A stretch of DNA of 64,000 nucleotides from Saccostrea cucullata (lineage: Eukaryota): positions 186,001-250,000 of the forward strand of contig NW_026931523.1 in assembly GCF_032062105.1 (NCBI RefSeq), written 5' to 3'. The notes beneath the pieces were generated by a model. The model made no database searches. It had not been told where the DNA came from and worked only from the letters and a program-made list of their open reading frames with translations. Below, piece after piece: positions 7,746-51,355 of this stretch (positions within the stretch are counted from its first letter, which is position 1; every line of letters starts with the position of its first letter). A program made the translations under genes and the position numbers.

Positions 7746-14202
<6,457 letters not shown>

Positions 14203-19727: not shown

Positions 19728-21274
19728 CTATGAATTAACATATCCAGATTCTCTGCCTTCAGGACTACGTCTCTTATCATTGAAATCTTCAATACTAGTA
19801 TTTTCGTTTTTGTTTATATATCCCGATTCGTCATCATCCACAATCTTCACATAAATGTGTTTCGGGGAATGTTCTGGAGCCAAGTCGGTGCCATCTTCTG
19901 GAACCTCCATGTTTGATTGTGGAATCGTTTCCTGTATCATTTCTATGGATTCATCAAAATCTTCGTTATCTGTGATCATGTTCTCGCTCACAGGATCATT
20001 TCGTGTTTCAAATTCCTCGTACGAAGTACCACCATCGAACACTGGAGACAAATATGTCGGATCTGATTTTAATCGTCCTCTTTGCTCCTGATTTAGCATT
20101 AAATCTTGTTCTCCAAGTTCAAAATTTAGAGTCTTATACTGAACAAACTGGTCAATTATATTGCTTTCGAGACCATTTCTGATGTCTGCTCTTTTAGTAC
20201 ACTTTTGATACACATATGTGACGACGCATAATCCAAAAAATAAGACAAACAGTCCAATTAAAATGATCCCAATGTAAACGACAAGCTCAGTATTTACTGA
20301 AAAATTGTCTGGATTGTAAGTGGAAGACGTAATGGTTACGCTCGGTTCAGTAGTCGTTGAACGACCCTCTGTAATATTTTTAATAATCCATGCTTTTGAA
20401 CTCGTGTCCCATCCGTCTGATGAAGGGATTGCTTCTGCATAATATAATTTGAAAGATACAGTAAATAAATTTACTATAAATATTTCACTAAATATTCCTT
20501 AAATGAATTTCTAGATTGCAAACTTCTCCAACCCTACCTAAACAGATTAGAAGTTACACAATTTGACAAATCAATGCATGTCTTATATTAGTTTGTTTTT
20601 AAACTGTGTAAAACATGAATAGTAATAAGTATTATAACTGATGCTTAATGGTTTAAATTTTAGTTATGAATCAGTTCAGTATAACTTAAATGAATATGTA
20701 CACTTGTAACTTGACCATCTTATTTTCAATGACATTTTTAGATAAAATTATGTACTAAGAATTGTACTTACTTGTGGATGCAATGCATCCATAACCATGA
20801 TGGCAAAGATGTTCTTCACAATTGCAGTCTTTTTGGCAATCCTTTCCATAGCTCGGATAAGCACATATTGTAGAGCAATTAAATCCTAGATATCCTATCG
20901 GGCAAGCTGAAAGTAGAGATTGTACATGCATGATACATTGTATATCATAGTCATAATTTGAGTTATATAACTGAAAAATTGAAAATAACTCATACAAAAA
21001 CTGAAAAATTTAAGTGTTTAGAAATTCAAAAATAAGGTTCACCTTCGCAAACCTTTGTAATTGTATTCCTCCAAAATCCTGCACAGCAAACAGGACCATG
21101 TACCCTTTGAAAACAATTAGAACATTAACTTCTCAAAAATTAAGAAAAATAAAATAAAAATTGCATGAAGATTTGACGAAAAATATACCCTCGACATAAT
21201 TGTCCATTAACAAATTCGATGTGAGACAAGCTGATCACAATGACAGAAATATAAATCATCATTTCATCAGTCAT
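19728..21274 (-). CDS. Single-pass receptor E1: signal peptide, mini-EMI-like and EGF-like (MEGF10/SREC-type) ectodomain, TM, tyrosine-motif tail; ~329 aa
   Basis: Exons (minus) 21189-21274, 21043-21104, 20772-20906, 19728-20434; GT-AG, phases 2/1/1. Ectodomain QLCRGVHGPVCCAGFW..CEACPIGYLGFNCSTICAYPSYGKDCQKDCNCEEHLCHHGYGC; TM LVVYIGIILIGLFVLFFGLCVVTYVY; tail VQYKTL, DPTYLSPV, HIYVKI, SGYIN, SGYVN. Confidence 0.88.
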
Positions 21275-22218
21275 TTTTAAAATTATCCATTTTGAATGAG
21301 GAAGTTATGTTCGATAGATCTGCCTTATCTCCTATTTATTTAATTCTTCCTTTTCATCTAAACTATTACAATTAATACACTGAATGCGTAGTGCTCATTT
21401 CAATTTATAATTTTTTACACAGTTGAAATGAAATACATGTATGCTATCCTTTTTCAAATGTTATGAGGTTAATATTAAAGGAAGTATGGCTTCAACGGAA
21501 ATATTTACCATGGTAGTAATTAAAAAATAGGAAAACATAATTATGAAAAATTAAAATATACCAAGGTATATTTCTTTTTTTTTTTTGAATTAAAGTTATA
21601 AGAACAAAGAAGGACTGATTAGAAAATTCTATGCATTTTATTTCTATGGAAGGCTTATTATATATTTATTGACTTTCTACATTTAGCCTTTATCTTAACA
21701 TCTAAAACTGTAAACAGGGGAAATATTCAATAAATCTATTTACATGTATTATCTTTTTATTATTTCAATATCCGAAATAAATAATATTTTCTCATAGATG
21801 TATTCATTATTTTCCGTCGAAAAAAAGTTACTGTGAAAACAAATTAACCATCTAAACATCTATTGTTATTTGCAAGTGGGAATAGGTGATATTGAAATTT
21901 TTAAAGAGTGGGAATAGGTAGAAGACACCGGGAAATTACATTATTTTCATTCGATGTAATGTAAAAATATATTTTTGGTATTAATATTTTGAGAGAAGTT
22001 AATTGTTGCAGCTCATAAAATTGGAAATTTTATTGTATTTATGCAAATGTATCATTTTTTATATAAATGACAATTTTAATAAAAACAAAATTTACTATCA
22101 CCCGACGTTCTTCTACGCATTCTTGAGATGTTCTAACAAAAATTTGCTCTCGGTTGATTAAAAAAAATTCGATTTCACGTTACGTACACGTGTAAGTTGT
22201 GGATGTGATATCGGCATT

Positions 22219-22325
22219 GATTGATTGATTGTTTGACGTCCCAGTCGAGAATTTTTCACTCATGGAGATGCCACCAATTGCCAGTGGAGAGCTGCAACAT
22301 CATAAGCTATGCTCGGCACTCGGGG
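22219..22325 (-). mobile_element. tRNA-derived SINE, 3' fragment
   Basis: GATTGATTGATTG tail followed by ACGTCCCAGTCGAGAATTTTTCACTCATGGAGA; homologous to the SINE at 45918-46218. Confidence 0.7.
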
Positions 22326-22627
22326 AGCTCCTCTCAAAATGACAATTGTTATTATATTCCAAATATAATTTGGCAGATTTGTACATTTCAGTTTCAACGA
22401 AATCACGATGAACAGTCTTTTAAATATTTTTTCGTCTCATCTGATATAATTTGAGATTACATTGTACGCTGATTACAATTATCCTAAATACTTCCAAAAT
22501 TCAAAAACTGATTTTAAAATAATTCTTTTTTTCAGAATTGTCACTCATATGCAAACCTCACCACTTATATTTTACATAGTCATTATAACATACACTCTTT
22601 TAAAGTCGGCGTCTACACAGATTTATT

Positions 22628-22937
22628 CCATGTTTACCCCTTTATCCCGTGGGTATGACCCAATGGATAAATTTTTCATATCCCACACTTAAGTGCAGTT
22701 ATGACGTCATAATGGTTTTTGCGTTAGCGTGATGAAGTAAAATAAAGTGGAGTACTATATAAAACACTGTATAACATGTGAAGCATTAAACATGGGATAA
22801 AAAGAATCTCCCGTGATTTGTAGTTGGATATGATTTTTATACAACTCGTGTGTTTTTATCCCCTCGCCAAGATTCAGGGATAAAAATCACACAACTCGTT
22901 GGATAAATATCATATCCAACTACAAATCACGGGAGAT
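22628..22937. mobile_element. Hairpin-rich non-autonomous element between E1 and R1
   Basis: Perfect arm ATCTCCCGTGATTTGTAGTTGGATATGAT (from 22806) pairs with ATCATATCCAACTACAAATCACGGGAGAT (to 22937); CCATGTTTA/TAAACATGG are inverted upstream; palindrome TTATGACGTCATAA at 22699-22712. Confidence 0.65.
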
Positions 22938-23372
22938 CCTATATATATCTCGTATCTGGGTATTTTTAAATTGATTGTACTTTCCAGTTCACGAAGACGG
23001 GTTAATTAACAGAAAGCAGGTCAGGTGTTATTTTTTTCTTATCTCAATCTAATTCAGAAAACAACTTTATAAAAATATATTTAAATAAATATTTTTACAA
23101 AATGGCCTCTTGTTATTTTCAGAGTTTATAATATGTTTTTTTATCTATCTATCGAAGGTCTTTGCGTCTGCGCAATGAAGGTACCTGAAATGTCCTCTGC
23201 CAGGTAAATGGTAGGTAAAGTTTCAATAACATGTTATTTCTAGAGACACTTAAGAGGGCTTTTCACGAAGATTGCGTTTATATAAATCAACATAGGCAAT
23301 TTGAGAAAACTACATGCTTCAAGCAGAAATTGTGAAATATTTCTTGGTATATTCTGATAATAAATTAAAATT

Positions 23373-23386
23373 TCTACTTTCGTTTT
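23373..23386. promoter_or_regulatory. Conserved IRF-element-like 14-mer upstream of R1
   Basis: TCTACTTTCGTTTT (reverse complement AAAACGAAAGTAGA), identical upstream of R2 and R3. Confidence 0.6.
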
Positions 23387-24165
23387 AGAAATCGCAAAAG
23401 AAATGTTTTACATACATACTATATTTTATACACTGTTTATCAAAAAAAAAAAAAAAATCATTGGAAGTTCAGTCAGCGAAACGCAATATTCATCAGTGAT
23501 ATACAGATTTATTATACAACCAATAGAATAAATAATTTACAACCTTGTATTTTATAATTCTAAAATTAATCATACCTAGAAAAGTTTAATCTCTAAAACT
23601 AATGTCAGGGGTCTATGTAGAATATGATCTTCAAAAATAAGAAAAAATACCTTTATTATTAATATAAATATATTACTCAAATGTAATCATAAACTGTAAA
23701 TAGAATAACATGAGTACTTGGGTACCATTTGATTGACAAACAATATAAATTCATATACATTAATTTGAAATGACCCTCTTATTGTTTCACTTATTGCATA
23801 TATATAACGATTAAACCACTCCAGACCTATAACCCAAAACAATAAAACAATATTGTATCATTGGGCCACACTAGTACTATATGAAGATGCAAATTAAGAT
23901 TACAGCATAAGAAATTTTCAACAGAAAGACAAGATATAAACAAGAAATTTACTGAATTAAATTCATTTATTTTTTTTTTATTTCAGTTATATATTGAGTA
24001 CGTTATGGTTAGATGTTAAAATTATTTCTTTTATTTCACAAACAAATATATTTAAAGGCTCTTTTGAGATTTTAATTTGTCGATTTTTTCATTATGGATC
24101 ACCGGTTTTAAACTCATTGAGCCTTATTAAATTTCTTACAAAGCAGCATAAAAAGTGAAAACACC

Positions 24166-27100
24166 ATGCAACACAAAATATGGTTTTCTGCCGTCATCCT
24201 GCTCCTTTATGTGAAGGTATTTTGTATATATGTTTTTGAGATTTGTTTTAAATTTGGGACAATAAATTTTTACCTTGAAGAATCAGACATTTTTATGTTT
24301 TTATTTTGAGAGCTATAACTTATCTGTTATTGTTATATTTCTTTTTAGAATGGTTTTTTCCTTGATGATAGACATTGTTTCAAGTCTTTAGAGACTATGC
24401 AGATAGTCGAAAGCTGTCCTCGTGACAAAAACGAAATGGAAGAAGCTGCCAAAGAAAAAAACTGTTCACATCATGCAAAGAACCAAAGTTGTACTGTTCC
24501 AGAAAATTTCAAATATCATTGCGTTATTAATGTTTTCAGGAATCAGTCTATCGAAGTTTGCGCCCCAGAGAGAAAAATTAATGGTAAAAAATGTTGCAAG
24601 CTCATCTATAATAAATTAAAATGTATGAAATACAGCCCCGCACACTTTTTATAATAATTGACACAAATCAACGTCACATTGGATCTTTTTTTTTTTTTTT
24701 TTTTTTTACAATAAAACTGAACATTATTGAGCTTAAGAATGAGACATTACTCAGTAATGTAATTAATATATGTTTGGAAAGGTACATATTTTTGAATTTT
24801 ATTATCTTAAAGTTTCAATGTTGATGTTTAAAAGGGTGCTTTATTAATTAATGCTATGCTGTTATATCTGTATAATTCTACCCTAGGTATTTACAAATAT
24901 TAATAATTATAATCATTTGTACTATTAATTGCAATTTTCAAACTGAATTCTTGTATTTTGCTATGTACTTTGCAGATTTTTCATACTCCTCATGGTATTG
25001 TCGAATTGTAGCTCCAAAATTGACAATGCTGCATAAAATAATAGGATAAAAAAATACTGTTTATCATTTACAGTCTGAAAAGTCTGGGTCGTATCTCACA
25101 TAATGCGAGATTCAGAAAGTAGACCTGTACAAAAATGCCAGCTTTTTAACATGGAAAGCAGTCGAAAAGATGAGAAATGCTGTTATCATCTTGTGCATTA
25201 GTGTCATATTAATGTACAAAACACACAGAATTTACTTGATATATTTTAAAAAGAACGGGTACAAAGTCGGCTGCATTTGATAAGAAACCATAAAAACATT
25301 AGGGAACAGCTGTCATAATCTATCAGCCAAGAGTATATCAAAACCCTACCAATCATAATGTGTGAATTATGCTTTAAAGCAGTGAAATAAACTTGAGATT
25401 AAGTTAGAAATCATTTTAAAAATATATTTTTTCCCACGTAACATAATTTCGCATAATTAAAATTTAATATGACCATGTGAGTTTAAAAATTGCACGGAGC
25501 TGTATTATGATTCAAGATGTACATTTTGCGATATTCAAATATTAACTCATGTTAATTGGAACAGAATACAGTTTATTTTAACCACTTTGACAATTGTATC
25601 ATAAATGCATTTTTGTAATATTCCGTGTTTATTTTGATGTTTTATGTGGTTTTTAGGCTTTTGTGTAGAATTCAACCTCGAAGGTGCAAGAATACAAGAT
25701 CAATACCTCTCTGACTGTACAGTTTTAGACCCGCCTTGTCCAAAAAGATACAGTTCAACTGATGCTTATTTATGTAAGAACATGCCATACATACATCTGT
25801 ATATATTATTTATATGAACTTGTGAGATATGATAAAATTACGGAGAATAAGAGTACAATCTCAAGTACTATACACATTGAAGTGCATTTTAGTTTACATT
25901 TTAATGAAGATTGCATGATATCGAAACACCCTTGCTAGGAAATCCTTTTTACACTTTCAGAACATCATATATTTGTTGCTATTCACAAACAGTATATAAA
26001 GAATATTACTCCACGGTACAATTACAAGTACATTTTAAAATATTGTGACTTATGGTAAGCTTTAAAAGGAATAATACATACTAACAGGAATCATTATTTC
26101 TATTCACATTCTCTAGATCAGGCGTGTTATAAACACTCCTCGGTCTCGGCAAACACGACTACTGACGAAATTTTCTCTGCCGGGAGCAAAACTACATCGC
26201 CTAGTAATTTGTTGCCGGAAAGTGAAACTGACAATAAAACTAAGTGAGTTCTTATTTGAATGAATGTAACATGTACAATGATTAAAACAACTAAACGCTA
26301 ACATAAATATGAATTGTTTTTCTCATTATTTAACAGGGCATTGTGGATATCTTTCACAGTTTTTGGAATTATTGTACTGGTTGCCATTCCTTTACTTCTA
26401 ATCTGTCGATGGAGTAAATATTACATATCTTTCTTGGTCAATTAATAATGTTATAAGTCTATCAAGAAATATCTCAATTTCAGTTTTAACAACTCCTAAT
26501 GCATTGCGTAACAATAAAAATGATTTCAAGATATTTCATTTGTTCAAAGAATACACTATCATGATTACAAACATATCACTTTGATGTAAATAGGAAGAAG
26601 GAAAAATCGAAAAAAACGAAGAGCAGGTACTGGAAGTGAAACCGACGCAACTAATGGAAAAACAAAATCTGAAATAGGTAAATATCTTTGGTTTGTATAT
26701 ATGCAGATTCTACTTTTAATGGTTATTTCCATAAAATTCAATGTAGAATTTCATTGTGAACAAAGCTCTGAAGTATGAAAATTAAACATAAAATGTGTTT
26801 TATCTTTAAAACTGAACAAAAAGGAAATGTTAAGAATTGAATGATTAGCTGTTTATAGATTTAAATGAGATATCAAAAGTGTTTTAAATGATGTATTTCT
26901 ATTTATTTTGTAGAGGAAATGAAGCCCTTAGTTATGCATGATTTAGAGGGCAAGTATTTCCATAATGTGTTAAATCAAATATGTTTTATCTTTAACCCAT
27001 GTTTCTCATACATATTTATTTTTCATGTAAAAATATTTCACACTAATTAAGTTTACTATATAAATATTTATATTTCCAGACAAAATGACGAGACGACAAA

Positions 27101-30100
27101 TAAAAATGGGAACAACAACAGATAGATATAGTAAGAATTTCATTGAACAAAATATTTTTTTTTTCAGAATGTGTTTAATGTTAAATGTTTAATTTGAAAT
27201 AGAGAATGAAAAATACATTTCATAAGATTTTGGAAAAACTTTTTGTAAAAGAATTATATGGAGATCTCGAACAGTATTCAATATCAAAGTTCATAAAACA
27301 ATACAAAATAGGAGCAAAGCAAAAACGGACCTCCGAAACAGCGGTGGGATCAGGTGCCATAGAGGAGTGAGCATCCCCTGCTGACCAGTCACACCCGCCG
27401 TGTGCCCCTTGTCATGATCGGGAAATAACGGAAAATATGTCGTCAATTCAATGTATAACTAATAATATGTATGAAAAACACCAGTCAGCATTTGACTTAA
27501 TCATAAATTGTATTGTCTGACAAGGTCATTGTATCGACCATAGAATTTACGAAATGATAACTTTAAACGAGACTGCTGATATTCTTGTTTCATCAACTTG
27601 CTTGTCAATGTCAATAATTTACCTCGTTTTAGAAACTGTTCATACGTAGAGCATGCTCTTGCGTATCGAATCAATTGAGATAAATACACACCGTTTGCAG
27701 GTGATGAAGGTACTAGTATATGGCTGCATAAGTAAGGGAAGTTGACGATAGAAAATTTAAAGTCACCATGTTTATCATATAGCTTGGATGTCAGATTACA
27801 ATTAACGTCTATTCAAAGTAAAATATCCAAGTATGAAACAGATTTGTCAGATTCTGTAGTATCTTTTATCTCAAACTCTCCAGGATATATCGTATCGATG
27901 AAGTAATGGAAATTATCTTTATTGCCAATACGTCGTCGAAGGCCACAACAAAAGTTTTCTTATTTTCACGCAAACGATTGTGCAAAAAGTCTGCTTCATA
28001 TGAATACAAAAATAGGTCTGCTAATAATGGAGCGCAGTTGGCACCTTTGGGAATTCCAATAGATTGTTAGAAGACCTGGTCTCCAAAAACCACATAGATA
28101 TTGTCAATCAGAAACTAATGCATTTCTTTGATGTTAACTTCAGAATACTTGTGTGTGCAATCAGAGTATATTTCCTTGCTGTGTGACATTGTACTAACAA
28201 ACTACAAATTTTACTATTTTAGCATTTACAGCGCAAAAGTCAAAGGAAGAGTTAGCAGAAGAAAACATAGGTAAGTTTAAAAAAATTGAAGTCATCTGAG
28301 GTATTGCCTTAAGTGGGTCTTCTGATTAAAAAAAGTTTCCCACATATGTCCTGTCTGTCGTGTGCTGTCAATGAACTTTTCCAGATCTACAACTTTATCT
28401 CTAAAACAACTGGATCTTATCAACTAAATTCAATATTGTTTACATGAAAAGCCTTGATCTTTTTCAAGGTGAGATTATTAAGAATTATTTCAAATTCCAT
28501 GACATCTTCTTATCTTATTCTATTGGGCCTGTGAAAATGAAACTTATCTAAAAGCTTCATCACATAGAATAATTTTCAAATGTCTTCATATCATGCCTCT
28601 TTGGCTTGGATGATCCCATGAAGGCAATCAAAGTTTAACATAGGAATTTAGTGTAAAAATCATATTAAAAGAATCAATGCTTTCATATTTACATAGACTA
28701 TCCTAAGAAAGCTAGGTTATAATTAGATACAGTGTACTGGTTTTAATCATGATCTCCGGGAATTATAGTATGGACTAGAACGGGTGATTAAAGTTATTCA
28801 TAGTAGCATAAAGAAAATTTCTTTACAAAACTTACTATCAGGAAAATAAAATCCATAACCAGTCGTATAAAGGCGCATCATCGGGGAGAGGATATTCTAA
28901 TTTGTTGAAATCCTGACTCCCGGGGTAAGTGGGGCCTCATTAGAAGATCACAAGTATACGTCACCCATGTTAAATTGCATCAATAATAAGAGATGGTGAG
29001 TCAATTCTTTCATGGCGTGTGATTTTCAATCCCAAGGGGAGACTGATTCTTCAAATAAGATCCTTTAACTGAGGTCCCTTAAAAGCTTGGCGCAGTAGGT
29101 GCTGGCATGATCTTTTACTGCTCAATTGACTCGAGTGCCGAGTATAGGACAAAATTTACAATCTTCCACCCGCAAGTGGTAGGGTTTCCATTTGAATATT
29201 CTAGACAGGAACCTTACACGTCAAACAAAGTATAAATATTTTAAAATGGTTTTGGAATTTTGGAAGTATTTAGGATAATAATAATCAGCTTAATCTCAAA
29301 TTATTTCAGATGAGACGAAAAAATATTTGAAAAGCTACAAGACTTTTAATCGCTACTTTGTTGAAACTGAAATGTACAAATCTGCCAAATCATGTTTGGA
29401 AAAAAATAACATTGTTGTTATGATTGGAGCTTCGGGTTGTGGGAAAACTAATGCTGCAATTCACATGCTATTCGAAGCGGAAAAGGAAAACTGGGTTTTA
29501 CGAAAATTTGGATCATGGGAAGAATTTACTCTTTTAGATGCAAATCAAAAGACTGTCGTCTTTATCGATAATGTATTTTATGGAACTGATAACTACGATT
29601 TAGAAAATTGGTGGAAGGAGTTGGATGAAATATATGGAAACTATCTAAAGCAAGGAACACAGAATTCACATGAAGAGTCTATGGTTAAGTTGCGTCTCAT
29701 TATTACTGCTCGAGAAAATGTTATTGAAAATGCATGTCAGTTTATGAAAAGGATAACGCCCGTATTTAATGATACTTATCGGGAATACGCAAATAAATAT
29801 CCTTTAACCGACGAAGAAAAAAATGAAATCTTTCATAAACAAATTGAATTTGCAGAGAAAGTAAAACATATTTGTTCACCACCAGGTGATTGTCATGGCT
29901 TCAGAACAAGTATATTTAAAGCTGAGGGTCCAATTGGTTTTCCCCTTTGTGCCCATTTATACGCATGCAAAGAGGAATACAGAAGGCGTGGTGCTAACTT
30001 TTTTTCTCATCCAATCGAATTTCTCAAAATTCAAATAGAAGATGAAGTCCGTAACGACCAAACCTCTAAAACCAAAACCCTCTTTTTTGTCCTTTTTCTT

Positions 30101-36547: not shown

Positions 36548-37204
36548 TTATGAATGTATTTAGTCGTATTTTTGACCTACGTACATACATTCGCGTATCA
36601 CCTTCTTGCGACTTGTTGACTTTTAATGTCGTTTTTGCGACGTATTTGTCGTTTGTAAGACTTATGATCTTATCAATCCGACTATTGCAACTAATAATGT
36701 CATACGTACGACAAAGTATCTTATTTTTGCGACATTCTATCATTTTAATTTAGTTTGAATCAATATTTGGTATGTACAAATTATTGTATGTTGTATGTAC
36801 GGGTGTGATATAATTATTATTTCATAAGTACGACATAATGATCTTGAACAAACGACTTGATATCTTGATATCACCTGAACGTATATTGACACTGGAGAAT
36901 CTATATTTAAATATCTCAAGCATTCCTCTTACAGGACTTTGATCAAGTTAAGGTAACCGAATCGTTAAGGTGGGTTGAAACGATATATATATGTATGTAC
37001 TAAAGTGCGCTCTATCGGATGTGTGCTAACAAATATTAAGTAAGTATATCTGATTGAGACATTTATAATTTGTACATCTTGTAATAAAACAAGATTTTCT
37101 CAAATCACAAAACTAGAAGGAATACCTGTTATATTTTAAAAGTAATAATCACTTGCAAAGAAAAGGGAAAAGACATAAAAGTTAGAATATTACAGAATAG
37201 AAAA

Positions 37205-37218
37205 TCTACTTTCGTTTT
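37205..37218. promoter_or_regulatory. Conserved IRF-element-like 14-mer upstream of R2
   Basis: TCTACTTTCGTTTT, about 800 bp before the R2 ATG. Confidence 0.6.
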
Positions 37219-38015
37219 AAATTTCACCTTGAAAAGGCATATAAAATATGTTTAATGTTCCTTATTTCTCCTGCCAGACAACTGAGCTTGATTTTTTTGG
37301 TTAAGTAGGCAAAAACAAACAAAATTATTGAAGTTAAAAAATGTCATTTATTGAAGTAAATGACGTAAAAGTAGTAAAACATACTTACAATACAAGAAAG
37401 GGGGTCAGGAAAGGGGATTTAAATATAAAATATTACATATCTTTATCACAATATTGTACAAACTGACCCCAAGCACTTAAAATATGTTTACTAATTTAGA
37501 AGACATTTCATAGGACATATCCTATTTTGACTGCGGATTATATGGACATCGTAACCTCTTGAATTTAAAACCTACTTTAATATATTTTACATGCTTTGAG
37601 TTTTCAGGTTGTAGGAATCTTATTAGGGTTATGTATATAAAAGTTAGCCTATCCATACGTGTACGGATAATACTAGACCGAGAGAAACATTTACTTCTGT
37701 ATTGAAGACCTAGATGTTCTCATGATCTTTGAACATCTGCCCCTGTTTTGTAGTGCATTGGTCACTTCTTACAATTCCTTGTCATGAACGTATCAAATCG
37801 AATGATCACAAGCCATGTAATTCTGAAAAATATATGTTTCCTATAGCTATTGTAAAAAGTAAAGTAAAAACACATCTGTATCGGATTGTACACAAATACG
37901 CATATATATAACTTTGAGTTCTGTATTGTTACCGCTCTTATTTGACAGAAATTTAAAAAGGCGGAAAAATGTCCATTTCCTTAAATATGCCATGCTTCAG
38001 GATTCTTTGCAAAAG

Positions 38016-41000
38016 ATGCAGATTGTAAGAAATATAAACACTTTTCTACTTTTGTCCATCAGTTTACACGTGAGTATATATCATTTTCTGGCATTCTTAA
38101 TTCAAGTATGGCTTTAAAGAACATTGAATTAAAATGATTTTTTAAATCATTTTTTTCAAATTAAAGAAGTATTCTGTACAGCATTAAAGAGTTGAGGGGA
38201 AAAAAAGAAAATGATTTTCAACTTAAAAAAGTATGAGGTGCCGTTTTCGTATTTGTTATCATTAATAATTTTAACTATTCGAATATTCAAATAGATAATA
38301 TCCTCTGTTCTAAATTGGATAAGTGATATCGCTTATTTGAATATGTGATAGCAACCTATATGCGTTTCCATAAATGCCAATATATATGAATTTAAATATC
38401 TATATTGGATTCCGAAACTTCATAAAAACTCTTTTAAATAAATATACATAACGGGTTCCAGTGCAAAGCCCATTTCTTTACTCCCCATTAAGATATTAAC
38501 AAATTGAAGGAGAAACTTCAGGCGTGCTGTGTAAGAAATGGTGTAAATCAAATGTGGATACTAAAAAATCTCAAGGAATTTTCGGAAAATTCGAAATCAC
38601 AAAATTTTCGATATGTTTTTCTGTGGAGTCGATATATTATTAGATTGACTGAACGAAAGGGATACACTCTTTATCTTATGCTTAGTGAGTTTAACAGGAA
38701 AAGCATTTGAAAATAATAAAAGCAAAATTGTAATTTTTATAAAGATATCATATTATAGAATTTTTGGATTTTTTCCTCAACCCAGTGACTTCACAATATG
38801 ATAATTGATTTTTTTATAATAAAGAATATATATTAAATAGAATGTTTTGTGCGTTGATCGATCATGTCAGTGGTCAAAGAGAACAATCGAAGATGTTACC
38901 AAATGCCCATTAACTGTTGAAGAAGTGGAAAAAGCCGCAAATATAAAAAATTGTAAAGCCTTGGCTCAAAAGCAGAACTGCACCGATCCTTCAAATTTCA
39001 AATATCATTGTGTGATAAATGAAGAAGAAGACTCACTGGTAGAGGTCTGTGCTCCAGCATACTACATTCATGGTGAGTAAAACATTATGTATAATTTAAC
39101 ATAATACACATGTAAATAAGGTGGACTAAAAATAATTTTGATAATTTTCACAAAAAGCAATCATAATCTAATACCATTTACTAATTTACAGGTTTTTGCA
39201 CAGAATTTAATGTGAAAGGTCTACTGATACAACCGCATTTCAGCATAAAATGCAACAATATTACACCATGCTCAGAACGTTATTTATCAACATTAGCATA
39301 TCAGTGTGAGTAAACAACAATTAAAACCATACATTTTTCAGAGTGGTTAATTAGTGAAAAAACACAAAGTTACTCATCAATAAAAAAAAGTGATACAACG
39401 TCAAGAAACCATTGTTTTTATTTTCTCCTCCGGGAAACCATAATACATGTATATATGTATATTTATGATATACAGATAATGTTATCTATGTTGAACAGAA
39501 TAGGTAACACTTTGTACATACACGATGCAATCATTTTTTTGCGTACTTAAATTAAGTGGCACTGTGCACTGCCTTACGTACGTCTCCATATCAAGCAGAT
39601 ATTTGAGTTTTGGTGCTAGCAAACATGACCAGTTTAATATACCCATAAATGATTATCAGTTGAAATTCACAAAATTTACAAACTGCCAACAAATGCAGTT
39701 CTGAAATTATGTTTATATGTAGTATAAATTTATGATCATATAGGTCACAGTACCTTAATTTTAAATTGTATTTCTACTACATCACATCACAATTCTTTTT
39801 TTTCAATTTCAAGAAACTGACAAATGAAAGTTATGCTCAAGAAGTAAAAAGACTGATTAAAGAAGCCAAGGTTTGATTTATAATGAGTGATAATATAATT
39901 ATTTATTTTATTTACATAATGAAGTTCCAAAGTGTTATGATGTGGTAAAGAAGCGTACTTTTTCCCCCCTGATTAATGAGACAACGACCATTTCATTTGA
40001 TTCATCTGACAGTGCAAAAGGGGACGGTGTCATTAAATGGCAAGTTTATGTTACCACACTTTAAGTTACAATTTATTTACACAATCTGTGCTTTGCAGAT
40101 ATAAAAAATAAACTTACTGTGTATGTTTGCAATATGCATGTGACATAACAAATTATACGATAACATATATAAGAACACACGCCATTGATATTTATCTTTC
40201 CCTACTTCACCTGACTGTGATGTTGTTAATGTGATATGTAGATTATCAAATTAGGCTTTCATGATTTAAAAAAAAAACAAAATGAGACAAAGATTTACCA
40301 AATAATCATGCATGTGCAAAATTGTTTCCTTCGGTTGATTTTTGTCTTTCAAACCAAACATGTAAAATCAATTTATACAAAGGTATTGAAAAAAATATCA
40401 TTCTCCTTCTTATTTTATCAATTTGATGTCATTTTATTTTTTCGACATGTTTTAGTACGTTTGATTATATGTCATCAATCATATCATGATATATCTAAAG
40501 AATCTGGGGGGATAAGTGAGTCAAATGCCCACAAGGATTTTGTCGCTCTGTAGGCATTTCGGAAATTTCATAGTTGTACGATTTACCTAAACATTTAAAC
40601 TTTGTACATCACTGTCCAAATGACAATATCTATATGTTAACAGTATTTTTAACGTGATGCTTTTCATATTGCGTGTTAATTTTTCTATCAAATGATTATG
40701 TCTTCAGGGTTTGGGAGATGGTACGCTTTACTTTTCCTTTTAACTGTTTTTGAATACAGAACAGTCATATCGCGCTGGCTACCCATGATTGAATTTGTTT
40801 ACATTTTAATCGTGTAATGCAGTCTTGAACTAAATGCATTTATGCCTCCTCCTTCCCTACCTACAAAATCAAAATTAGACAAACTCACAGGTATGTTGAA
40901 AAAAGTTTATTGATCAAAATATAATAAAATTTTTGATCAAATAAAATCATAAACTTGTACAAACTTTTTTTAAAAAAATAATTCCAGTATAACAAAATGG

Positions 41001-44000
41001 ATTTCAAAATGTTGATATATAAATTACAGTTTCCTTAAACAAAAATGGATTAAACATTATAAAATTGTTAATTCAGTTCCATTGTATCAAAATGGATGCT
41101 ACAATGTAAATTTGCAAATGAAGTTACAGTATCGCAAAGGATGGATTTGTCAATGCAAAGGAACATCAGTAATCCGCAAACATATCACATATAAAATCAA
41201 AAGAGTAGAATAATACAAAAATTACAAGAAACTAAATATCTGCTTGATATCCACAAAAATGCATAACATAATGAATATCTATAAAGCATGTATCAAAAAG
41301 TATCAGATAAGTGTATTTACACAAAAATCGACTAGTGGCAACAGGTTAAAATGTTATTTCACATGTAGATTGAAAACATGTTTATTATAGGTAAAACATT
41401 AATTGACCGTAAATAAATTCTTCATCTTATTTATTCATTTTGTTTTTTGTAAAAAAAAAATGTTTATCTAATTTTAACCTGAACTTAAAAAAATCGTAAT
41501 TCGAACACTCGCGACAGGTAACTGGTTGCTTCAACTCCGCCGCTATGACTACTGAGCCACGAAGTCGCACAGACATTTCCCTTTAAATAGCAAACAGTTC
41601 TATATATAGCAAACGCACAACTGGACTTAGAGTTTTTGAGAATATGTTGCGAAATTTAAGTAGGTAAACTAACTTTTTTATATAAAGTGGGTCTTCGTAC
41701 CATTTTTTTTTAAATGTTGAGAGATACATTCTTCCATACCCTTTGAATATTTGTTTACAAAAAAATGGTACGAAGACCCACTCCATATAAAAAACACAGT
41801 TTTAACATTCAATGTCTATCATTTTTACGGTTACTAAGTGTATAACTACTTTAACGGGTTAATTACAATCAATTTGTAAGTAATTTGATTCAAGTTTAAC
41901 CTTTACTGTATGCATACGGTTATAAATTACTCCCAAATTTAACAAAAAGAGGAATTTGCAAGATTTTATTTAATCGATATTTTACTTGCCCTTGCGTAGG
42001 CATATGACTCGCCTAATCCACCCAGATTCTTTATTCTAAATTCAAAGACGACTTGATAAGCAGCCTTCATTTAAGAGAGTGAATATATATATAAATGCCA
42101 TGCATGTGATATCATAGAAAGCTTTATTAATAGGTGGGTATTGCGCAGACTGTGTATTATACATGTACATTGTATATGGGGAAAGTATTTTGAGAAGCAC
42201 ACTACGTTTTCTTGTTCTCTGTAAGATTAGTAATTTCCTCTCTTCCCTTGAATCAATTTGTTTTCATTATTCCTAATTTGAGCTCTTCTTCAACTTTTCT
42301 TTAGGTACATATATTTCCTGATAGTCTTTGTAATCACAGCATGTTTTGTTTTTGTACCTGTCTTTGTTGTGTGCATGTGCGGATACCGCAGGAAGCAAGG
42401 TAATTTATTGCAAAGAATCCACTCGATGTATTTCATTTTAAAATCTTAAAAATGGAATTAAATGGATGTTTTTTTTAAATCAAATTAGGCTGGATGAAAA
42501 TTGCATGAATTATATGAGTTTATAAATATGAAGTTGAAGCATATGTATGTGTTTGTGAATCTGCGAATGCTTAAGCGGACTTAATTATAGAGAGTGAAAA
42601 AATTATACTTTGAAAAATACCTCTTCATTCTTGTGAAGATGTTATGACATCAAGCCGTTGAAAATTTGTTATTTTATTTCAGTTTCATTTAAGATAACAC
42701 TTTTTTTTACAGAACAACAACGAAATGACTTAAATGAAGAAGGTATTATGTAATTTATATATACCTGCAATAAATTATCAATCCTCAATGAGTCAAGTTT
42801 GTTTGATTTCTGGTTTTACTTGTAGTGTGTCACATAATACATGTATGAAGAAAAGAATTCTAAGTTGTGAAAAGTACAAAATTTTACTTTTTAGGTGTGG
42901 TATCCCAAGAATTGCTCCGAAAAGAGGCTAAGAAGGGTATGTTTATATTTTATTCATGCAATGATGTGAATTGTAAAGTAACAGTAGGAAATATACAAAG
43001 ATTTCAAGTTGTCCATGGTCGTGAATAACAATTCGTACTCAGAAGCATTTGTCAATATTCCAAGAGTGAAGTATGTATACAAATCATTTTCTGAATATTA
43101 AAACATACCGGTATATCATAAGATCAAAGATCTATCAAATAAAACAAACTTGAGTAAACGTATACTAGTTACAGGATGAGTTTACAGGAATGCAAGGTGG
43201 ATTGTAGTCATTTACAAATCGCAACCATGAATACATATAATTAAAATGAAATTAAACTTCCCATTAAGGGAAATAAAATTTCAAATTTATTTTTCTTGAT
43301 TACAGTGTAATTTTTTAAACGCGAAAGGTGATTAGTCTTTGAAGAAACTAATTTGTACCCCTCGGAACAATGAAACAGATCGCGTGTGCAGTTTAAAAAC
43401 AATTATTTGTAAATCAACATTTATAGTATTAAGATATTTTTTAAAAGTTCAGATATTTTTTTTATATATATAACTCGTAAATATTTTACTTACGGAAAAG
43501 AAAAGTTCATCTGTCCAAGTACTTTGATTATGTTTATAAGAAACAACGAATAATGTAAAACGATCTGATCTGTAATTATGCCTATAAAATTCATTATCTT
43601 AAAGTGAATTCTTCTATCAATATTTTTTGCAAATCTTGTCTTTAAGTTTTAACTTTATTCATAGTTGAAAATGATTTGTGACAGTTGAGTTTATTTATTA
43701 TAGGCCGCAGCAGCGGCCGATCTATTTGTGGTTGTGTTAGAAAGTGCACATGGGGAATTGAGAAGATATTTTTTATTAGTTCAGTAGAATAAGTCTTTTA
43801 TGATAACAAGTAAAAACGTAGTATTAATTGCCGATATTATATTTCAAGTTCATTATCATTTCTCATCAGATAATTGATAATTTATAGTTATATAAAAATA
43901 GTTTACAATATTTATACTCCCCGGCCTGGGTGTGTGTAAGATATGAAAGGAAATCGTCATGATTTTCCGGATTATAATGACGTGGTATAGAATGGTGCAT

Positions 44001-47000
44001 TAAAATTAAAAAAAAATTAACTTGCGAAAATTGTTTTGAATATGCTCTTCAGCTTCAAATGATAAAAAGATATATTTCTACATTTTGCTTTGCGGCTTGC
44101 AGCATAGCCAACTCTGCAGAAACCATGAGCATTATCACGTGGCCAAGATTCAGGGTATCAGCTGCACATGGTTCATCTTGAGAGGCCTATATATCTTCAT
44201 TTTGATGACATTAAAATATTATCATTCAGCAATGATTATTTTTTGTTTGTTTGGGTTTTTTTTTTACATCAATGGATCTATTTTTTAGCAAATTCGGTAT
44301 TTAAAATGTCCATTTATTGAATTCCTAAAAATTATTTACTTTGCTTTGAAGAATGAATAACAATGAATCAACTACATGTATTTCACCTTTAAATATCTTG
44401 ACGTGCTTTCCTTGCATGGGCCCTTTAAAACTGAAACGATCGATATTTAATTACTAAATTTTGTTTGCGGCCAAGTTGATGCTTTGCATCAATTACTTGT
44501 GTATAAATTGTTAATGATACACCACTGTCAGACATATTTACGATAAAATTTAGTTTAGAAGTAGGCTGTCACCAGTTTCACATTTTACACGTTTACCAGA
44601 ATAACAACATGAAGAGTAATTGCGATGAGAAGTGAATATAGGCAAACACCTAAGTGTTCACTTCTTGAAAGACGATACGCGGATGATCTACTTCTTTGGA
44701 AATACTTCGAGGGAAAATTGATCATCTGCATGAATCTAAACACTTTATATTGTTGATTTTCTGACATTAAAAAGATGATTTTGTGATACTGAAAAATCCA
44801 ATTGAATTTCCTTTATCAAAAAATGATTTTTTAAGTTTAAAATTCGAAGTCTTCGTATAAAAAGAATCCCGTTTATTATTTTTTGATGTCAGAAAAAAAG
44901 ATTTGTTAGATGTAAGAAAATTTTTTTGATATCATATTAGAGCAAGGAGTCTTTTTGTGAACACAGTGCTTACATTACCTCTGGGATTCTAGTGGATTCG
45001 GTAAAGCTAAATAAATTATTTTAATAAGCACTTTTTCTTTATTTATTATCGATTCTACTGGTTACTACTTTCATTGCTTGAAATAATAATAATTTTATAA
45101 ATATTTTGTGATCTTTCTTTAAATTTCTTTAGAAATAACTGACATTTCTTCCACTCTCTATATGTTAATATTCAAAACTTTATATCTGTTATCTTTATAT
45201 CAATAACAAACTTAGTTGTACTGTTCTTTTATTAATAATTTTTTTTTACAGAAAGACGATCTGAGTCCAAAATGGAAAGCGATAGTAAGCATTTCTTTGT
45301 TTCTTATGTTTCGTATGAATTCACCGTTGGTGAATGTAAAATATTTGGAGTTGATGTAATTGTTTTATTTACATGTTTCGTTTATAATAATAGACGATTT
45401 CTCGTTTAAATGAAATATTGATGTTCGTAAATTTACTTTTAATTTGTTGTATTCATTTTTGAATGATATCTTTAAACCTTAGAAAGAAACACATAACTCT
45501 TAAACAACCCCTCTTTTCCCGCCATTCAATCGCAGTGTGTTAGCCCCCCTTGTTCAACAATAGCAGCTCGATTTTTACGAAGCATTAGGTTTATCAGGCT
45601 CTTGATCTGAGCATAAAGAATCTTCTTATCAATTTTTAATTATCTGTTTTTCAAATACTGAAGTAGATTTTTTCTAACCTGGCCCAGTGTAGTAAATATT
45701 GAACGTCTGGTATTAAAACTGCCATTCATGGTTTTGAAATTCATGAGCATATTAAGTTGCTTTGTAGTGCATATTTGCAAAACATAATATGCAACTCTCC
45801 TTTACTTTAAGCTTTGAGAATTTAAAGCAAGAGCCAAAAATCAGAGCTTTCAGTAATTTTAAGGAAATACTGGCATCATATCGGGAAAAGAATTTTTTCG
45901 GAACAACATTACATTAATTGATTAATTGTATATTGATTAACGTCCAATTCGAGAAGTTTTCACACATATCAAGAAGTCTTCGTATACCGGTGAAGGGATT
46001 CACATTAAGATCTATACTCGGCAATCAGGGCCATTCAGCAGTTACGGTTCTTACGCTTTAAAGGTCATATCCTAAAACCTGTCACTTCTAATGCTGAGCG
46101 CTCGGTGAAGGAACAGTCATCAGCTATGTTTACGTTTTAGGTTTGACGCGGTGCTGCGATCGAGAATCGAACCCGGCCTCTTGATCAAGATGTGAACGCT
46201 CTGCCACTAGGCTACGGTTGAATATCAATGCAATATTATACATTTATTAACTGAGTTCAAGGGCAACATGCGTTTTGTCGGATCCAAGAACCAAACTGTT
46301 TGCCTGAGGCCGTTCGGCCGAAGGCAGACAGTTTGGTTGGAGGGTCGACAAAACGCATTTTGCTCGAGGGCAAGTCAATATATGTTTTGAAATACCTTTC
46401 ATTTTTTGTTGTTGTTGACACTCGTACATGTATTTTGTACTGTCATCGTAATGTAACCTTAGGTCCGTCACTTTCGAACATCAACGAATGAAACTGAGAT
46501 TAAGCTCCGCCAATTCTGTGAAATGACGGGTCCAACATCTCTTCGAGGGGTCCAACATCTCACCCAGCCGTTTAACATCGATTTTTTAAGACCGCTCAGC
46601 AAAACATTAGAAATATTAGACTTTTTTCCGCATCGATTTGTGTAGGAACAACATTTTAAAGGTTTAACAATATACATTTATTGAGTTCGAGGGCAACATG
46701 CGTTTTGTGGCGCCCAAGACAAAACAGTTCGGTTTAAGGGTCGACAAAACGCATTTTGCACGGGAACTTAGTCAATACACTTAATGTTTTGTGATATCTT
46801 TCATTTAATTTATTTTTCAAAATGTATTTTTTACTGTCTTCAGTGATGTATCATCAGGCCTGTCACTTTTGATCACCAACGAATGAAAATGAGATAAATC
46901 TCCACCCATTCTATGACTAAGAGGTCCAACATCTCACTCAGCAGTCAAAATCGATTTTTTTATGCTCGTTTAGCAAAACATTAGAAATGTTAGAATTTTT

Positions 47001-50000
47001 TCGAATAGATTTGTTTAGGAACAAATTTTTTAAGGCATTACAGCTACAAACCCTTGAAAACCTGTGTTATTTCAAATGTTTTTATCGAACATGCAATTTG
47101 GGATTTTTGTTAAGAGGCCTCAAAATCAATTTTGTTACTGAAGTGGAAATCATTCAATCTTTAAATTACTGATTCGGCCAAATTAAGGATGACCTTATTT
47201 TATAACCTTTATGCATGTATAATTTTCCCCTTGAAATAAGGATGTTGTGTTTCGTTTATGTTTCGGTCTATATATCATTTGCCTTTCATGTTACAGGTAT
47301 CTCAAGAGAATCGATAACAGATGAACTAGTAGGTAAGTTTACAATAATTTGAAGTTAAAAGTGCGTAATGTTTATGACAAAATATCGTTCTTTCCTCTAT
47401 AAAAGGGGAATTTTACCCATTTCGAACGTAATTTTTGATACTTTTTTTAAAAAAAAATGATATTGGATTTATCTCCAAATAATACCTGTCTATCTTTCAT
47501 CATTTAATTTATACACAATCAAATTTGAAGTAGAAATAAGTTTGGTAAAAAAGAAAAAGACAGAAAATAAACAAAGAACATATATGAAAATTTAAAATGA
47601 ATCTAATGTCTCACATTTTGGTATTCTTTCAATAGTTGTTGCTCCCGGCAGACTGTTGATAGACATGTATCACGAATCAGGTAAAAAATAACCATCTTTA
47701 ATTTTTTCAAATGTTAAGGTCCTATAGTTTTGAGTAAAATGAGAACTGTTATTGCAATAGTTAGTGAATAAACCATGATAATATGATATAAATAGTTCAT
47801 TTTGAAAAGAGGAGGCATGAAAATAGTTAAGTTCAATTTCTTACGAAGGAATAGGTGTATTTTAAAACCTCTGTACTTCTGCCTTTTAAACTCAACCTGG
47901 GTATGTTAGGGCTTCACTTGGATATCTGCAAAACATGTTATCAACTGAACTTAGTCATTTAGATGGTATTTTAAGCGAAGTATTTTATACAGGAGTGATA
48001 TCCCTTCACGAATGCAAAAGGAACATATAAAATTATAAAATATAAGTATGATTAAAATCAGATATACAGATTTATTATGAAATAGTTTTCCTATGATGAT
48101 GACAGGCTACGTTTTAAAATTTTACCCAGTATTTCCTCCACCGATTTAAACAAGAAAGATTCAAAAGTTCAGGATATTATGTATATTAGTTCTCATGCTC
48201 CGACAATATAGAAAGATTGTATTATATAGAATATGAAAAATGCTGGAAGAATATTATGACTAGTATGGCTTGATAAAAAATATTCCATCACCTAGGTACA
48301 ACATAAAACACTTTTTGATAGCTTTCAGTGGGCTCCAGGTTATTATTTCTGTGACCGGAGAGTATGATTCTAGCAACATTTTTCATGTTGTACGTAATTA
48401 TTTTATAAACAGAAATGAATATTTCCCGGGGTTTGCTAGACCTTTAACTTATCATGAAGGCATATTTTTCTATTTACAGACGTCACACAATGATATTCTT
48501 GTTCGATGCTCGTTTTTCCTCAGACTTATTAACGTGTGCATTGATAAAAATATTTCATGCTTTAACCATAGCTTAATTTCCCAATTAATCAATGCTGAAA
48601 CCTTGCCGAATAATGATCTGGGTTCTGCCATTACATACCTGCGTTTAACCTCAACTTCATTTATAAAGAAGTTTGCTCAAATTTGAAATAATTATTGTTT
48701 TTAACCACCAGGTATGTGATTTTGAAAGTGCAGGATCTTTTACGAACGAATACAAGCATCCTTTTATTGAATATGTGGTTCAGCACATCATCTTACTTAT
48801 CCATTATGAACAAGAATGCTTTTTCAATTGAAATGTTTAAATTACGTTTTATTTAAATAAACATTTTGTGTCATGTAGTTTAAATTTTAAGTTCAAATTT
48901 TGCTTTACTAGAGGAAGAAAGAGAACAGTATGCAGTGGAAAATGAAGGTTTGTAAAAATTATAATGAATAAATTTTAAATAATAATTTTTCAGTAAAAGA
49001 AAGCTATAAAGGAACACTAGATAGGTCCTAAAATATTGGATAAAAAGTAAAACAAACTCTTCCACTGATTTCGGTCTTAAATGTACATGTATGATATATA
49101 AATGAACTGTTAAAAGCATTTCCATGTTACAGAGAATATATAAGGAAATATTTCTTATATTTTTTTCTCTTTTTTAAGATCACACCAAGTCCTATCTCAA
49201 TGCTTTTCAACATTTTGAAAAATATTTCGTGAAAACAAAGGTATTTACAGTCTGTAAAAATAAGTTACAAACAGAAGGCGTTGCTGTTTTAGTTGGTCCG
49301 CCGGGTTACGGAAAAACTAACATTGGTATAGGCATCATGAAAGATGATGTTTACAAAGATTGGAAAAAGCGAAAAATAAAGTCTTGGGCAGAATTTAGAT
49401 TTATAAATTCAGAAGAGAATTCTCTCATTTATATTGATAATATATTTGACGGGTTCATGTATCATCATGAATTGGAAAAATGGTGGAATATATTAAATAA
49501 AACCTTCTATGATAATATTTCACATAATCCGAATGATGAGCAAGATGAAAGTGAATTTTTTGCAAATAAAGGAGGAAAGATTCATCTTTTTATAACCGCC
49601 AAAGAGAGTGTATTAACAAAAGCACGTGAGTACAACAAGATCAAGAGAACCCCAGTATTTAAAAGAAACTGTATTATAAATGTTACAGATTATGGCTTCA
49701 CAGCTACAGAAAAAGACGAAATCTTAGATAAACAATTTGAATTTGCAGAGAAAATATTGGATATTCCAAGGCCGTTGGTAGATCAAGAGTTTAGAAATAA
49801 AATGAAGGAATTAGTTGGTCCTATCGGCTTTCCACTTTGCGCTCATCTTTATGCGTGTGAAAAGGATCATAGAAATACTGGCATTGACTTCTTTCTTTTC
49901 CCGATCAATTATCTTCGGAAACAAATAAAATATGAAATTGAAGGTGATCAAACTCATGGCGTGAAAACGTTACTCTTATTGCTATTCTTAAGTGAATGTT

Positions 50001-51355
50001 TGTCTCTCTCAAATATATGTGTCGAAAAACTTAACATTAGTGATTCTGACAAATGCAAACGGTTTCTTGAGAAGAATTTTTCGGAGGAGATGCTTGAAAG
50101 CTTTGAATCTTTAAACTTTGAGGATTTAGCTACTGTTGCGAATAAATTAACAGTAACTTTAATTGGTAGTGAAACAGAGTGCATGTATCAATTAAAGCAC
50201 CAAATTATTTTTGATGCAGTCGGTTTTTATTTTTGCACCGAATGTTTCAATGTTGCAATAAAATACTTTCCAATAGGTGCTTTTCAAAAGCATGAATATA
50301 TAAATCCTTCAGAAGAATTTTGTGACATTTTTTCTTCTCGAATCATTGATGAAGTGCATAGTGGGAATGTTTCTGAAGCCCTCTCTTGTGTTGCACTCAA
50401 ACAATACCATTTTGCACAACGCGTTTGTGATATTTTAAAATCAAAAAATGATGTGGAATCGTTTCTTCTTGAGACGGATTCAGTTACGGTCTATCCTCTT
50501 CCATCTGTATTTTGGATCAGCAAATACGAGCATATTATTTTATCGAAGTTGCTTTATGAATTGGTTCAAGAAAAGGGTCTTCTAGTTGACCACACTTTTT
50601 ATCTAGCTCGCTTTGGTGACTGTTGTGCAAATGACGAAAATTTTCTTAGAAATACGGCAAAAACTGTATTCAATTCGACGACAGAGATTATGAATTGTGT
50701 CTTTCAGTACAAGAATCACAAAGGAATGACAGTGTTGCACATTGTCCTTACATCCGAAAGACCTGATTATGATGCATATTTGATAATTAAAAAGTTACTG
50801 GAGGACTGCAAGTCCAAAACGTTGTGTGATTCAGACAAACAATGTGCCGTTTACTTTGCTGCAAATGAAGTACGATACAGTAGAATTTTATGTATTTTGG
50901 CATTGTTTGATAGCAAAATAGATATTAAAAAATCTTTCCCAAATGACACATCTCCAATTCATATAGTTTTGAAACTAATGAATGATAATTCTCATAAAAG
51001 TGTTCCTTTTCAACTAGAAATGCTGATCCGTGTTTGTATTTTCATAATATATGGAGTGGATTCGAAAATGAAGAAATCAAATGATCGTCGGTCAGTAAAA
51101 GATATGTGCAAAAATACAAATTGCAAATATATAAAAGAATTGTTATGCTCAAACATTTCAAAAAGTCAAAAGAGAATGTCAGAGCTTATTCAAACATTGT
51201 TGAGAGAACTTCCTGTCAAGGACCGAAACGAGAAAGTGCTTGAGGAACATGTACTTAAATCTGAGGGGCGATTGGATAAATCGCTAAGAAATGCAATTTC
51301 TTTGGCTGTACAGCAACTAGCCGGATATATACATCTGTCGGAAAATGAACGTTGA
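38016..51355 (+). CDS. Receptor R2: paralog of R1 (Cys-rich ectodomain, TM, STAND NTPase, ankyrin repeats); ~1002 aa
   Basis: Exons 38016-38069, 38841-39072, 39192-39305, 39925-40039 (GC donor), 42305-42399 (TM YIYFLIVFVITACFVFVPVFVVCMC), 42713-42742, 42895-42936, 45252-45284, 47297-47332, 47636-47680, 48912-48947, 49179-51355 give one continuous frame. Walker A GPPGYGKT, Walker B LIYIDN, LFITAK, GPIGFPLCAHLYAC (shared with R1). The micro-exon set is less certain than the rest. Confidence 0.8.
38445..38610 (+). mobile_element. Penelope-like retroelement fragment
   Basis: Remnant KEKLQ...RNGVNQMWILKNLKEFSENSKSQNF, typical of the region N-terminal to the RT of the family seen at 27290-28170. 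Confidence 0.65.
41496..41561 (-). mobile_element. tRNA-derived SINE head (decayed)
   Basis: Minus strand CGTGGCTCAGTAGT (A box)...GTGTTCGAATT (B box); no full cloverleaf. Confidence 0.45.
41674..41794. repeat. Short inverted-repeat (MITE-like) element
   Basis: TTTTTTATATAAAGTGGGTCTTCGTACCATTTTTT ... AAAAAATGGTACGAAGACCCACTCCATATAAAAAA. Confidence 0.8.
45918..46218 (-). mobile_element. Near full-length tRNA-derived SINE
   Basis: Minus strand starts ACCGTAGCCTAGTGGCAGAGCG (A box) ... GGGTTCGATTC (B box), then a conserved body and a CAAT-type tail. Confidence 0.8.
46240..47040. mobile_element. Tandem pair of a hairpin-headed non-autonomous element
   Basis: Copy 1 (~46240-46670) has the hairpin GGGCAACATGCGTTTTGTCG..AAACTGTTTGCC..GGCAGACAGTTT..CGACAAAACGCATTTTGCTC; copy 2 (~46672-47040) has the hairpin tip deleted. 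Confidence 0.75.

What the first reader, a model, noticed from the sequence alone, without database searches (positions are those of the whole stretch)
19728..51355. Repeated head-to-head two-gene cassette: EMI/EGF tyrosine-motif receptor paired with a TM-STAND receptor
Seen in sequence: E1(-)/R1(+) have ATGs 2.9 kb apart (21274/24166) and E2(-)/R2(+) 2.6 kb apart (35375/38016). Both genes stayed intact in both copies, keeping the phases of the homologous exons despite strong protein divergence. Established: divergently transcribed paired immune genes that work as one unit are known for plant NLRs (RRS1/RPS4, RGA4/RGA5, Pik-1/Pik-2), and split receptor/adaptor designs are known in vertebrates. 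Inference: the R proteins lack a signalling effector, while the E proteins have tiny ectodomains but tyrosine-motif tails. The pair may be one co-regulated complex in which E is the signalling or inhibitory subunit, or R guards E. I know of no description of this pairing.
Basis: partly seen in the sequence, partly recalled or inferred. Interest (0 to 1): 0.85.

Follow-up and report, generated by a model that had tools for sequence, protein, structure and literature searches.

The report
Oyster head-to-head receptor and co-receptor pairs
Oysters repeatedly keep two unrelated membrane-protein genes back to back, one with a tyrosine signalling tail and one with an uncharacterised outer domain (here ending in an NLR-like ATPase), which resembles the paired receptor genes of tunicates and may be an undescribed two-chain immune receptor, although no interaction has been shown.

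Summary
In this Saccostrea cucullata window, E1/R1 and E2/R2 are intact head-to-head pairs under purifying selection. The layout recurs in S. echinata (both pairs), Magallana angulata (one pair) and about 20 other places in this genome. In a motif-based sample, 8 E genes lay upstream of an R ectodomain on the opposite strand and none on the same strand. E and R distances correlate (Mantel r about 0.8). The reading needs three changes. (1) Pairing follows the R ectodomain, not the STAND: at least ten paired R-type genes have no R-type STAND downstream, which weakens the 'STAND needs E' and guard ideas. (2) Pairing is not obligatory: most E and R-ectodomain genes are unpaired, one intact STAND receptor has no E, and partnerless R3 is frameshifted. 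(3) The parts have precedents: oyster TM-nSTAND3-ankyrin receptors (Kaur 2021) and head-to-head FF/FcoR pairs in Botryllus (PNAS 2025). E carries MEGF10-type EGF but no full EMI domain. Best reading (0.45): E is the tyrosine-signalling co-receptor of a two-chain receptor. Co-expression and binding are untested. This scan reported the same cassette earlier on another contig (s1-697781).

The parts
19728..21274 (-). E1: signal peptide, MEGF10/Draper-type EGF module (12 Cys), S/T stalk, one TM, tail with VxYxxL, YxxP, YEEF, YxxI and two YxN motifs. Exons 21274-21189, 21104-21043, 20906-20772, 20434-19728
21275..24165 (.). E1-R1 divergent intergenic region, 2.9 kb; patches 68-91% identical to S. 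echinata, no homology to the spacers of other pairs
   Evidence: places 23064-23099 left out
24166..31651 (+). R1: signal peptide, Cys-rich mollusc-specific ectodomain, stalk, TM, micro-exon linker, nSTAND3, ankyrin repeats. Exons 24166-24216, 24349-24583, 25657-25773, 26117-26243, 26337-26413, 26594-26677, 26914-26949 (GC donor), 27080-27130, 28223-28270, 29310-31651
34340..35375 (-). E2, same four-exon plan, shorter tail (YxxL, YxxP, SxYxxV). Exons 35375-35308, 35213-35152, 35055-34921, 34839-34340
35376..38015 (.). E2-R2 divergent intergenic region, 2.6 kb, partly conserved in S. echinata
38016..51355 (+). R2, same plan as R1. Exons 38016-38069, 38841-39072, 39192-39305, 39925-40039 (GC donor), 42305-42399, 42713-42742, 42895-42936, 45252-45284, 47297-47332, 47636-47680, 48912-48947, 49179-51355
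62589..63575 (+). R3, first three exons of a third receptor gene; no E exon between R2 and R3; its STAND exon lies beyond the window and switches frame

Best explanation
E and R are cognate chains of a two-chain cell-surface receptor, encoded as a divergent pair and duplicated as a unit. R supplies a mollusc-specific Cys-rich ectodomain (inferred ligand or partner binding). E, a cut-down Draper/MEGF10-like protein, supplies a tyrosine tail that after Src-family phosphorylation would recruit SH2 proteins (ITIM-like VxYxxL, Grb2-type YxN; inferred from known consensus motifs). The pairing belongs to the E + R-ectodomain unit; the nSTAND3-ankyrin switch is an add-on carried by about 14 R loci. 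Shown: gene anatomy, conserved linkage and orientation, covarying distances, purifying selection. Inferred: co-expression, physical contact, immune role.
For: Divergent pairs in three species of two genera. Motif-based sample on contigs C1-C5215: 8 loci with E upstream on the opposite strand within 20 kb against about 0.23 expected from genome-wide density, and 0 upstream on the same strand (tallies by hand). Protein-hit lists: 18 divergent, 5 convergent, 6 same-strand within 15 kb. Mantel r 0.80-0.84, p 0.017 to 0.0002. The E transmembrane helix is the most constrained part of E exon 4, dN/dS 0.04-0.12 against 0.7-0.9 for the stalk. Tyrosine motifs align across paired E proteins at only 21-45% identity. 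Partnerless R3 is frameshifted. Same logic as Botryllus FF/FcoR (PMC12582321).
Against: No interaction or co-expression data. Only about 8 of 46 R-ectodomain motif genes and about 10 of 100 E motif exons in the sample are paired; an intact STAND receptor on C1617 has no divergent E within 79 kb. Spacers range from 0.7 to 14 kb or more and share no sequence. No charged residues in either TM. Covarying distances are expected from block duplication alone.
Confidence: 0.45

Rival explanations
1. Hitchhiking: an E gene once landed upstream of an R gene inside mixed immune clusters, and tandem or segmental duplication copied the block. The genes work independently.
For: Both families are very large (586 E motif exons, about 280 R motif exons) and mostly unpaired. 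C13660 and C22917 carry the two pair types in the same order, as a larger block duplication would give. Three of the eight sampled pairs form one recent clade.
Against: Orientation is kept across 21-45% E identity and two genera while spacers turn over completely; both partners stay under purifying selection.
Confidence: 0.27
2. Co-regulation without a complex: the pair shares upstream control elements so both genes are switched on in the same cells, but the proteins act separately in one pathway.
For: Divergent layout; 672 bp between annotated genes in M. angulata; conserved spacer patches between Saccostrea orthologues.
Against: Most spacers are 2-14 kb with no shared sequence between pairs; it does not explain the strongly constrained E transmembrane helix.
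Confidence: 0.2
3. Guard model: the intracellular STAND-ankyrin part of R monitors the tyrosine tail of E and fires when a pathogen alters it.
For: Walker A and B are intact in R1 and R2, sensor and GxP motifs in R1; ankyrins sit where NLR sensor repeats sit; 7 of 9 testable STAND-type R genes have a divergent E.
Against: At least ten paired R-ectodomain genes have no R-type STAND downstream (against 18, 19, 33, 37, 64, 72); no effector domain in R1/R2.
Confidence: 0.08

Closest known systems
Botryllus schlosseri fester family / fester co-receptor (FF/FcoR) pairs (PMC12582321)
   Same: Two unrelated type I membrane families encoded head-to-head; the co-receptor carries ITIM and other tyrosine motifs; birth and death as pairs; extra unpaired co-receptor clusters.
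   Different: FF and FcoR are Ig-superfamily proteins with shown co-expression and an allorecognition role. The oyster chains use a MEGF10-type EGF module and a Cys-rich domain with no PDB match, and some end in a STAND ATPase.
Crassostrea receptor-like TRADD-N proteins (Kaur et al. 2021, PMC8195603)
   Same: Signal/TM + Cys-rich region + TM + variable intracellular module, including nSTAND3 + ankyrin (LOC111106874) and AIG GTPase. nSTAND3 was defined from these proteins.
   Different: They carry DED and TRADD-N after the TM; R1 and R2 have only a 110-130 aa micro-exon linker. The passages read do not mention a partner gene. Homology of the Cys-rich region was not testable.
Plant head-to-head NLR pairs (RRS1/RPS4, RGA4/RGA5, Pik-1/Pik-2)
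   Same: Divergent two-gene unit with a STAND ATPase member.
   Different: There both partners are cytosolic NB-ARC NLRs; here both are membrane proteins, only one may carry a STAND, and pairing does not depend on it.
Draper / CED-1 / MEGF10 / SR-F receptors
   Same: E ectodomain is a MEGF10/PEAR1-type EGF module; tyrosine-motif tail.
   Different: Only about one and a half EGF units, no full EMI domain, DPxY rather than NPxY.
Sea cucumber membrane NACHT receptors AjNLRC4 and AjNLR-new (PMC13133943)
   Same: TM-anchored STAND-class receptor in an invertebrate.
   Different: NACHT with Ig domain, not nSTAND3-ankyrin; no gene pairing seen in the passages read.

Membership tests
nSTAND3 STAND NTPase | Pfam PF20720 above the gathering cut-off | tested here: met
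   64.9 and 49.6 bits against 27.2
nSTAND3 STAND NTPase | Intact Walker A, Walker B, sensor and GxP motifs | tested here: met
   All four in R1, Walker A and B in R2; the R2 GxP motif is visible in the ORF
Kaur 2021 TRADD-N receptor family | DED plus NCOA6 TRADD-N after the TM | tested here: not met
   No such Pfam hit in the last exons; the TM-to-STAND linker is too short for both domains
Kaur 2021 TRADD-N receptor family | Same Cys-rich ectodomain | not testable with these tools
   The supplement part read lists architectures only
FF/FcoR-type paired receptors | Head-to-head pairs duplicated as units | tested here: met
FF/FcoR-type paired receptors | Ig-superfamily ectodomains | tested here: not met
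   E is EGF-like; R fold has no PDB match, best Z 2.5
FF/FcoR-type paired receptors | Co-expression of cognate genes | not testable with these tools
Plant-type NLR pair | Both partners are NB-ARC-LRR proteins | tested here: not met
   E has no NTPase; R has nSTAND3 and ankyrins
Draper/MEGF10 family | MEGF10/PEAR1-type EGF repeats | tested here: inconclusive
   No Pfam hit; Atlas features 0.91 and TM 0.57-0.61 to Draper, MEGF10, SR-F; weak Tie2 EGF match
Draper/MEGF10 family | Complete N-terminal EMI domain and NPxY motif | tested here: not met
   Only a 20-aa exon with CCxGF precedes the EGF exon; tail has DPxY

The most novel reading that the evidence does not exclude
Oysters have a modular two-chain receptor system: a constant-type tyrosine co-receptor (E) paired with a receptor chain whose ectodomain has an undescribed fold and whose inner part is swappable (nSTAND3-ankyrin, AIG GTPase, ankyrins or a short tail), used for self/non-self or pathogen sensing and convergent with tunicate FF/FcoR.
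Probability: 0.25. Interest if true: 0.85.

Novelty: new variant of a known kind. Interest (0 to 1): 0.62.

Why it matters
Oyster genomes hold hundreds of uncharacterised small receptors with no known ligand or pathway. If the pairs are functional, genome position names the partner of each orphan receptor and makes cognate-versus-crossed tests possible. It would add a third independent case of head-to-head receptor pairs (after plant NLRs and tunicate FF/FcoR), and link tyrosine signalling to a membrane-anchored STAND switch in a farmed animal with serious disease losses. The R ectodomain is also a large family (1262 representatives) without a solved fold.

Tried and rejected
Spliced models were searched exon by exon by reference; the joined search was left out (joins were used only in local scripts for frame checks and a tree of separately aligned exons). 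Shared promoter sequence between pairs: none beyond repeats. Fold of the R ectodomain: no match in PDB by Foldseek or VIA, no Pfam family. EMI label rejected as a full domain. DAP12-like charge pairing rejected: no charged TM residues. Diversifying selection on ectodomains not seen between one pair of orthologues. Four blind look-ups for further genomes gave no usable locus. Paper searches found no description of this pairing; the library lacks most subscription papers.

Full report
Source and observation. The window is contig C13660:186001-250000 of a 1.17 Gb assembly; its R1 last exon is identical to an NCBI Saccostrea cucullata protein. Gene models built from coordinates confirm four intact genes: E1 (minus, 329 aa), R1 (plus, 1055 aa), E2 (minus, 254 aa) and R2 (plus, 1002 aa), with matching intron phases within each family and one TM helix before the cytoplasmic part. 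NCBI splits R1 into two models in S. echinata, probably at a GC donor. That donor, the GC donor of R2 and the micro-exons tested are conserved in S. echinata while introns diverge. Full-length signal-ectodomain-TM-nSTAND3-ankyrin proteins of 1017-1111 aa exist among assembled contigs and Crassostrea RefSeq models. RNA runs hold the R1 STAND exon or a close relative.

Anatomy of R. The last exon encodes nSTAND3 above the Pfam cut-off, with ankyrin hits in R1 and intact Walker motifs. Exons 2-4 encode a Cys-rich ectodomain of about 125 aa. It folds confidently (pLDDT 84), has no Pfam or PDB match, and its Atlas neighbours with TM above 0.5 are all mollusc-dominated eukaryote clusters. A profile finds 1262 representatives at 50% clustering. 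Among the best 149, most have a TM and a short tail; some end in nSTAND3, ankyrins or an AIG1 GTPase. About 14 R-type STAND loci are recovered by three different queries in this genome, against about 280 ectodomain motif exons.

Anatomy of E. The ectodomain is about one and a half MEGF10/Draper-type EGF units, not a full EMI domain. Across nine paired E proteins (non-orthologous identity 21-45%), a membrane-proximal YxxL and a distal YxE/K-I/V motif align in all, and a YxxP motif and a conserved TM align in seven. By known consensus, VxYxxL is ITIM-like and YxN is a Grb2 site; this is inference. The E family is large: 586 motif exons, many in E-only arrays.

Is the pairing more than one duplication? 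Yes. Four other STAND-type R genes fetched from this genome (C22917 twice, C2478 twice) each have a divergent E whose EGF exon lies 4-11 kb upstream of the ectodomain exon. S. echinata keeps E1-R1-E2-R2 in the same order. In Magallana angulata an E gene lies 672 bp upstream of an R gene on the opposite strand. For a test that does not depend on my queries, I compared degenerate-motif lists over contigs C1-C5215 (100 E exons, about 46 R exons). The nearest E within 20 kb was divergent at 8 loci, convergent at 1 and same-strand downstream at 1; about 0.23 divergent cases are expected from genome-wide density. The fairer comparison uses the upstream side only, because the R gene body occupies the other: 8 opposite against 0 same strand (p 0.004 by hand; 0.016 if the three related C1223/C2478 pairs count once). 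Protein-hit lists give 18 divergent, 5 convergent and 6 same-strand neighbours within 15 kb (hand tally, biased towards relatives of the queries). E and R-ectodomain distances correlate (Mantel r 0.84 for nine pairs, 0.80 with orthologues and one recent duplicate removed, p 0.017), although the deeper branches of the two trees are not resolved identically. Both partners are under purifying selection against S. echinata, dN/dS 0.08-0.47 per exon, with the E transmembrane segment at 0.04-0.12.

What changes the reading. First, the pairing follows the ectodomain. Divergent pairs on C12556, C11317 (two), C23404 (two), C610, C15062, C8113, C3030, C3302, C4905 and the third pair on C22917 have no R-type STAND hit downstream (against 18, 19, 33, 37, 64, 72, 73). 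For at least ten of these the contig has room for it. These lists are lower bounds, and another intracellular domain may be present. Second, pairing is not obligatory. About a fifth of R motif genes and a tenth of E exons in the sample are paired. Of nine testable STAND-type R genes seven are paired (the C1223 assignment is uncertain, its STAND lies 50 kb on); C1617 is intact and unpaired, and R3 in this window has no E and a frame switch in its STAND exon, which may be decay or an assembly error. Third, spacers vary from 0.7 to 14 kb or more and share only repeats, so a single compact bidirectional promoter is not the rule.

Mechanism. The most likely reading is a two-chain receptor in which R binds and E signals through tyrosines, with the STAND-ankyrin module an optional switch on one R clade (0.45). 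Hitchhiking in duplicated blocks (0.27), co-regulation without contact (0.20) and guarding (0.08) remain. Nothing here shows expression in the same cell, contact or an immune role.

Comparison with known systems. nSTAND3 was defined from Crassostrea receptor-like proteins with a Cys-rich ectodomain, TM, DED, TRADD-N and variable C-termini including nSTAND3-ankyrin (PMC8195603). R1 and R2 look like shorter relatives without DED/TRADD-N; shared ectodomain ancestry is untested. Head-to-head receptor/co-receptor pairs with tyrosine motifs, duplicated as units and accompanied by unpaired co-receptors, are established in Botryllus (PMC12582321). The oyster pair is laid out like that system but is not a member, since neither chain is Ig-like. 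I found no paper on this pairing.

Limits. Spliced models were searched exon by exon and the joined search was left out.

Verdict: real and conserved linkage, a new variant of a known kind, function unproven. Interest 0.62.

Noticed in passing
window 62589-63575 (+) and L002 6292-8416: Third receptor gene R3 has no E partner and its STAND exon switches reading frame (decay or assembly indel).
   Followed up: partly
window 22326-22524 (-): Inverted partial copy (81%) of the intron end and first codons of the R1 STAND exon (29234-29431) inside the E1-R1 spacer.
   Followed up: no
window 14895-15597 (-) and 16470-18140 (+): Two C1q-domain genes, also head to head.
   Followed up: no
window about 14030-14203 (+): Last exon of a thiolase-like gene, judged by eye from its C-terminal motifs.
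   Followed up: no
window 26949 and 40039: GC-AG introns in both R genes, conserved in S. echinata; the R1 one probably makes NCBI split the gene into two models.
   Followed up: yes
P0298, P0305 (R ectodomain relatives): The same ectodomain is joined to an AIG1 GTPase or to ankyrins alone, so the inner module is exchangeable.
   Followed up: partly
L022 1895-2393 (-) and 24407-27912 (-), M. angulata: Two further E-type genes flank the pair and are not in the called-gene list.
   Followed up: no
G000 C9995, C11876, C19364, C9872: E and R-ectodomain exons 3-8 kb apart in convergent orientation; possibly a second arrangement.
   Followed up: no
G000 C1223:53592 and C5717:178478: Related nSTAND3 exons with open frames of about 1650 aa, much longer than R1/R2.
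   Followed up: no
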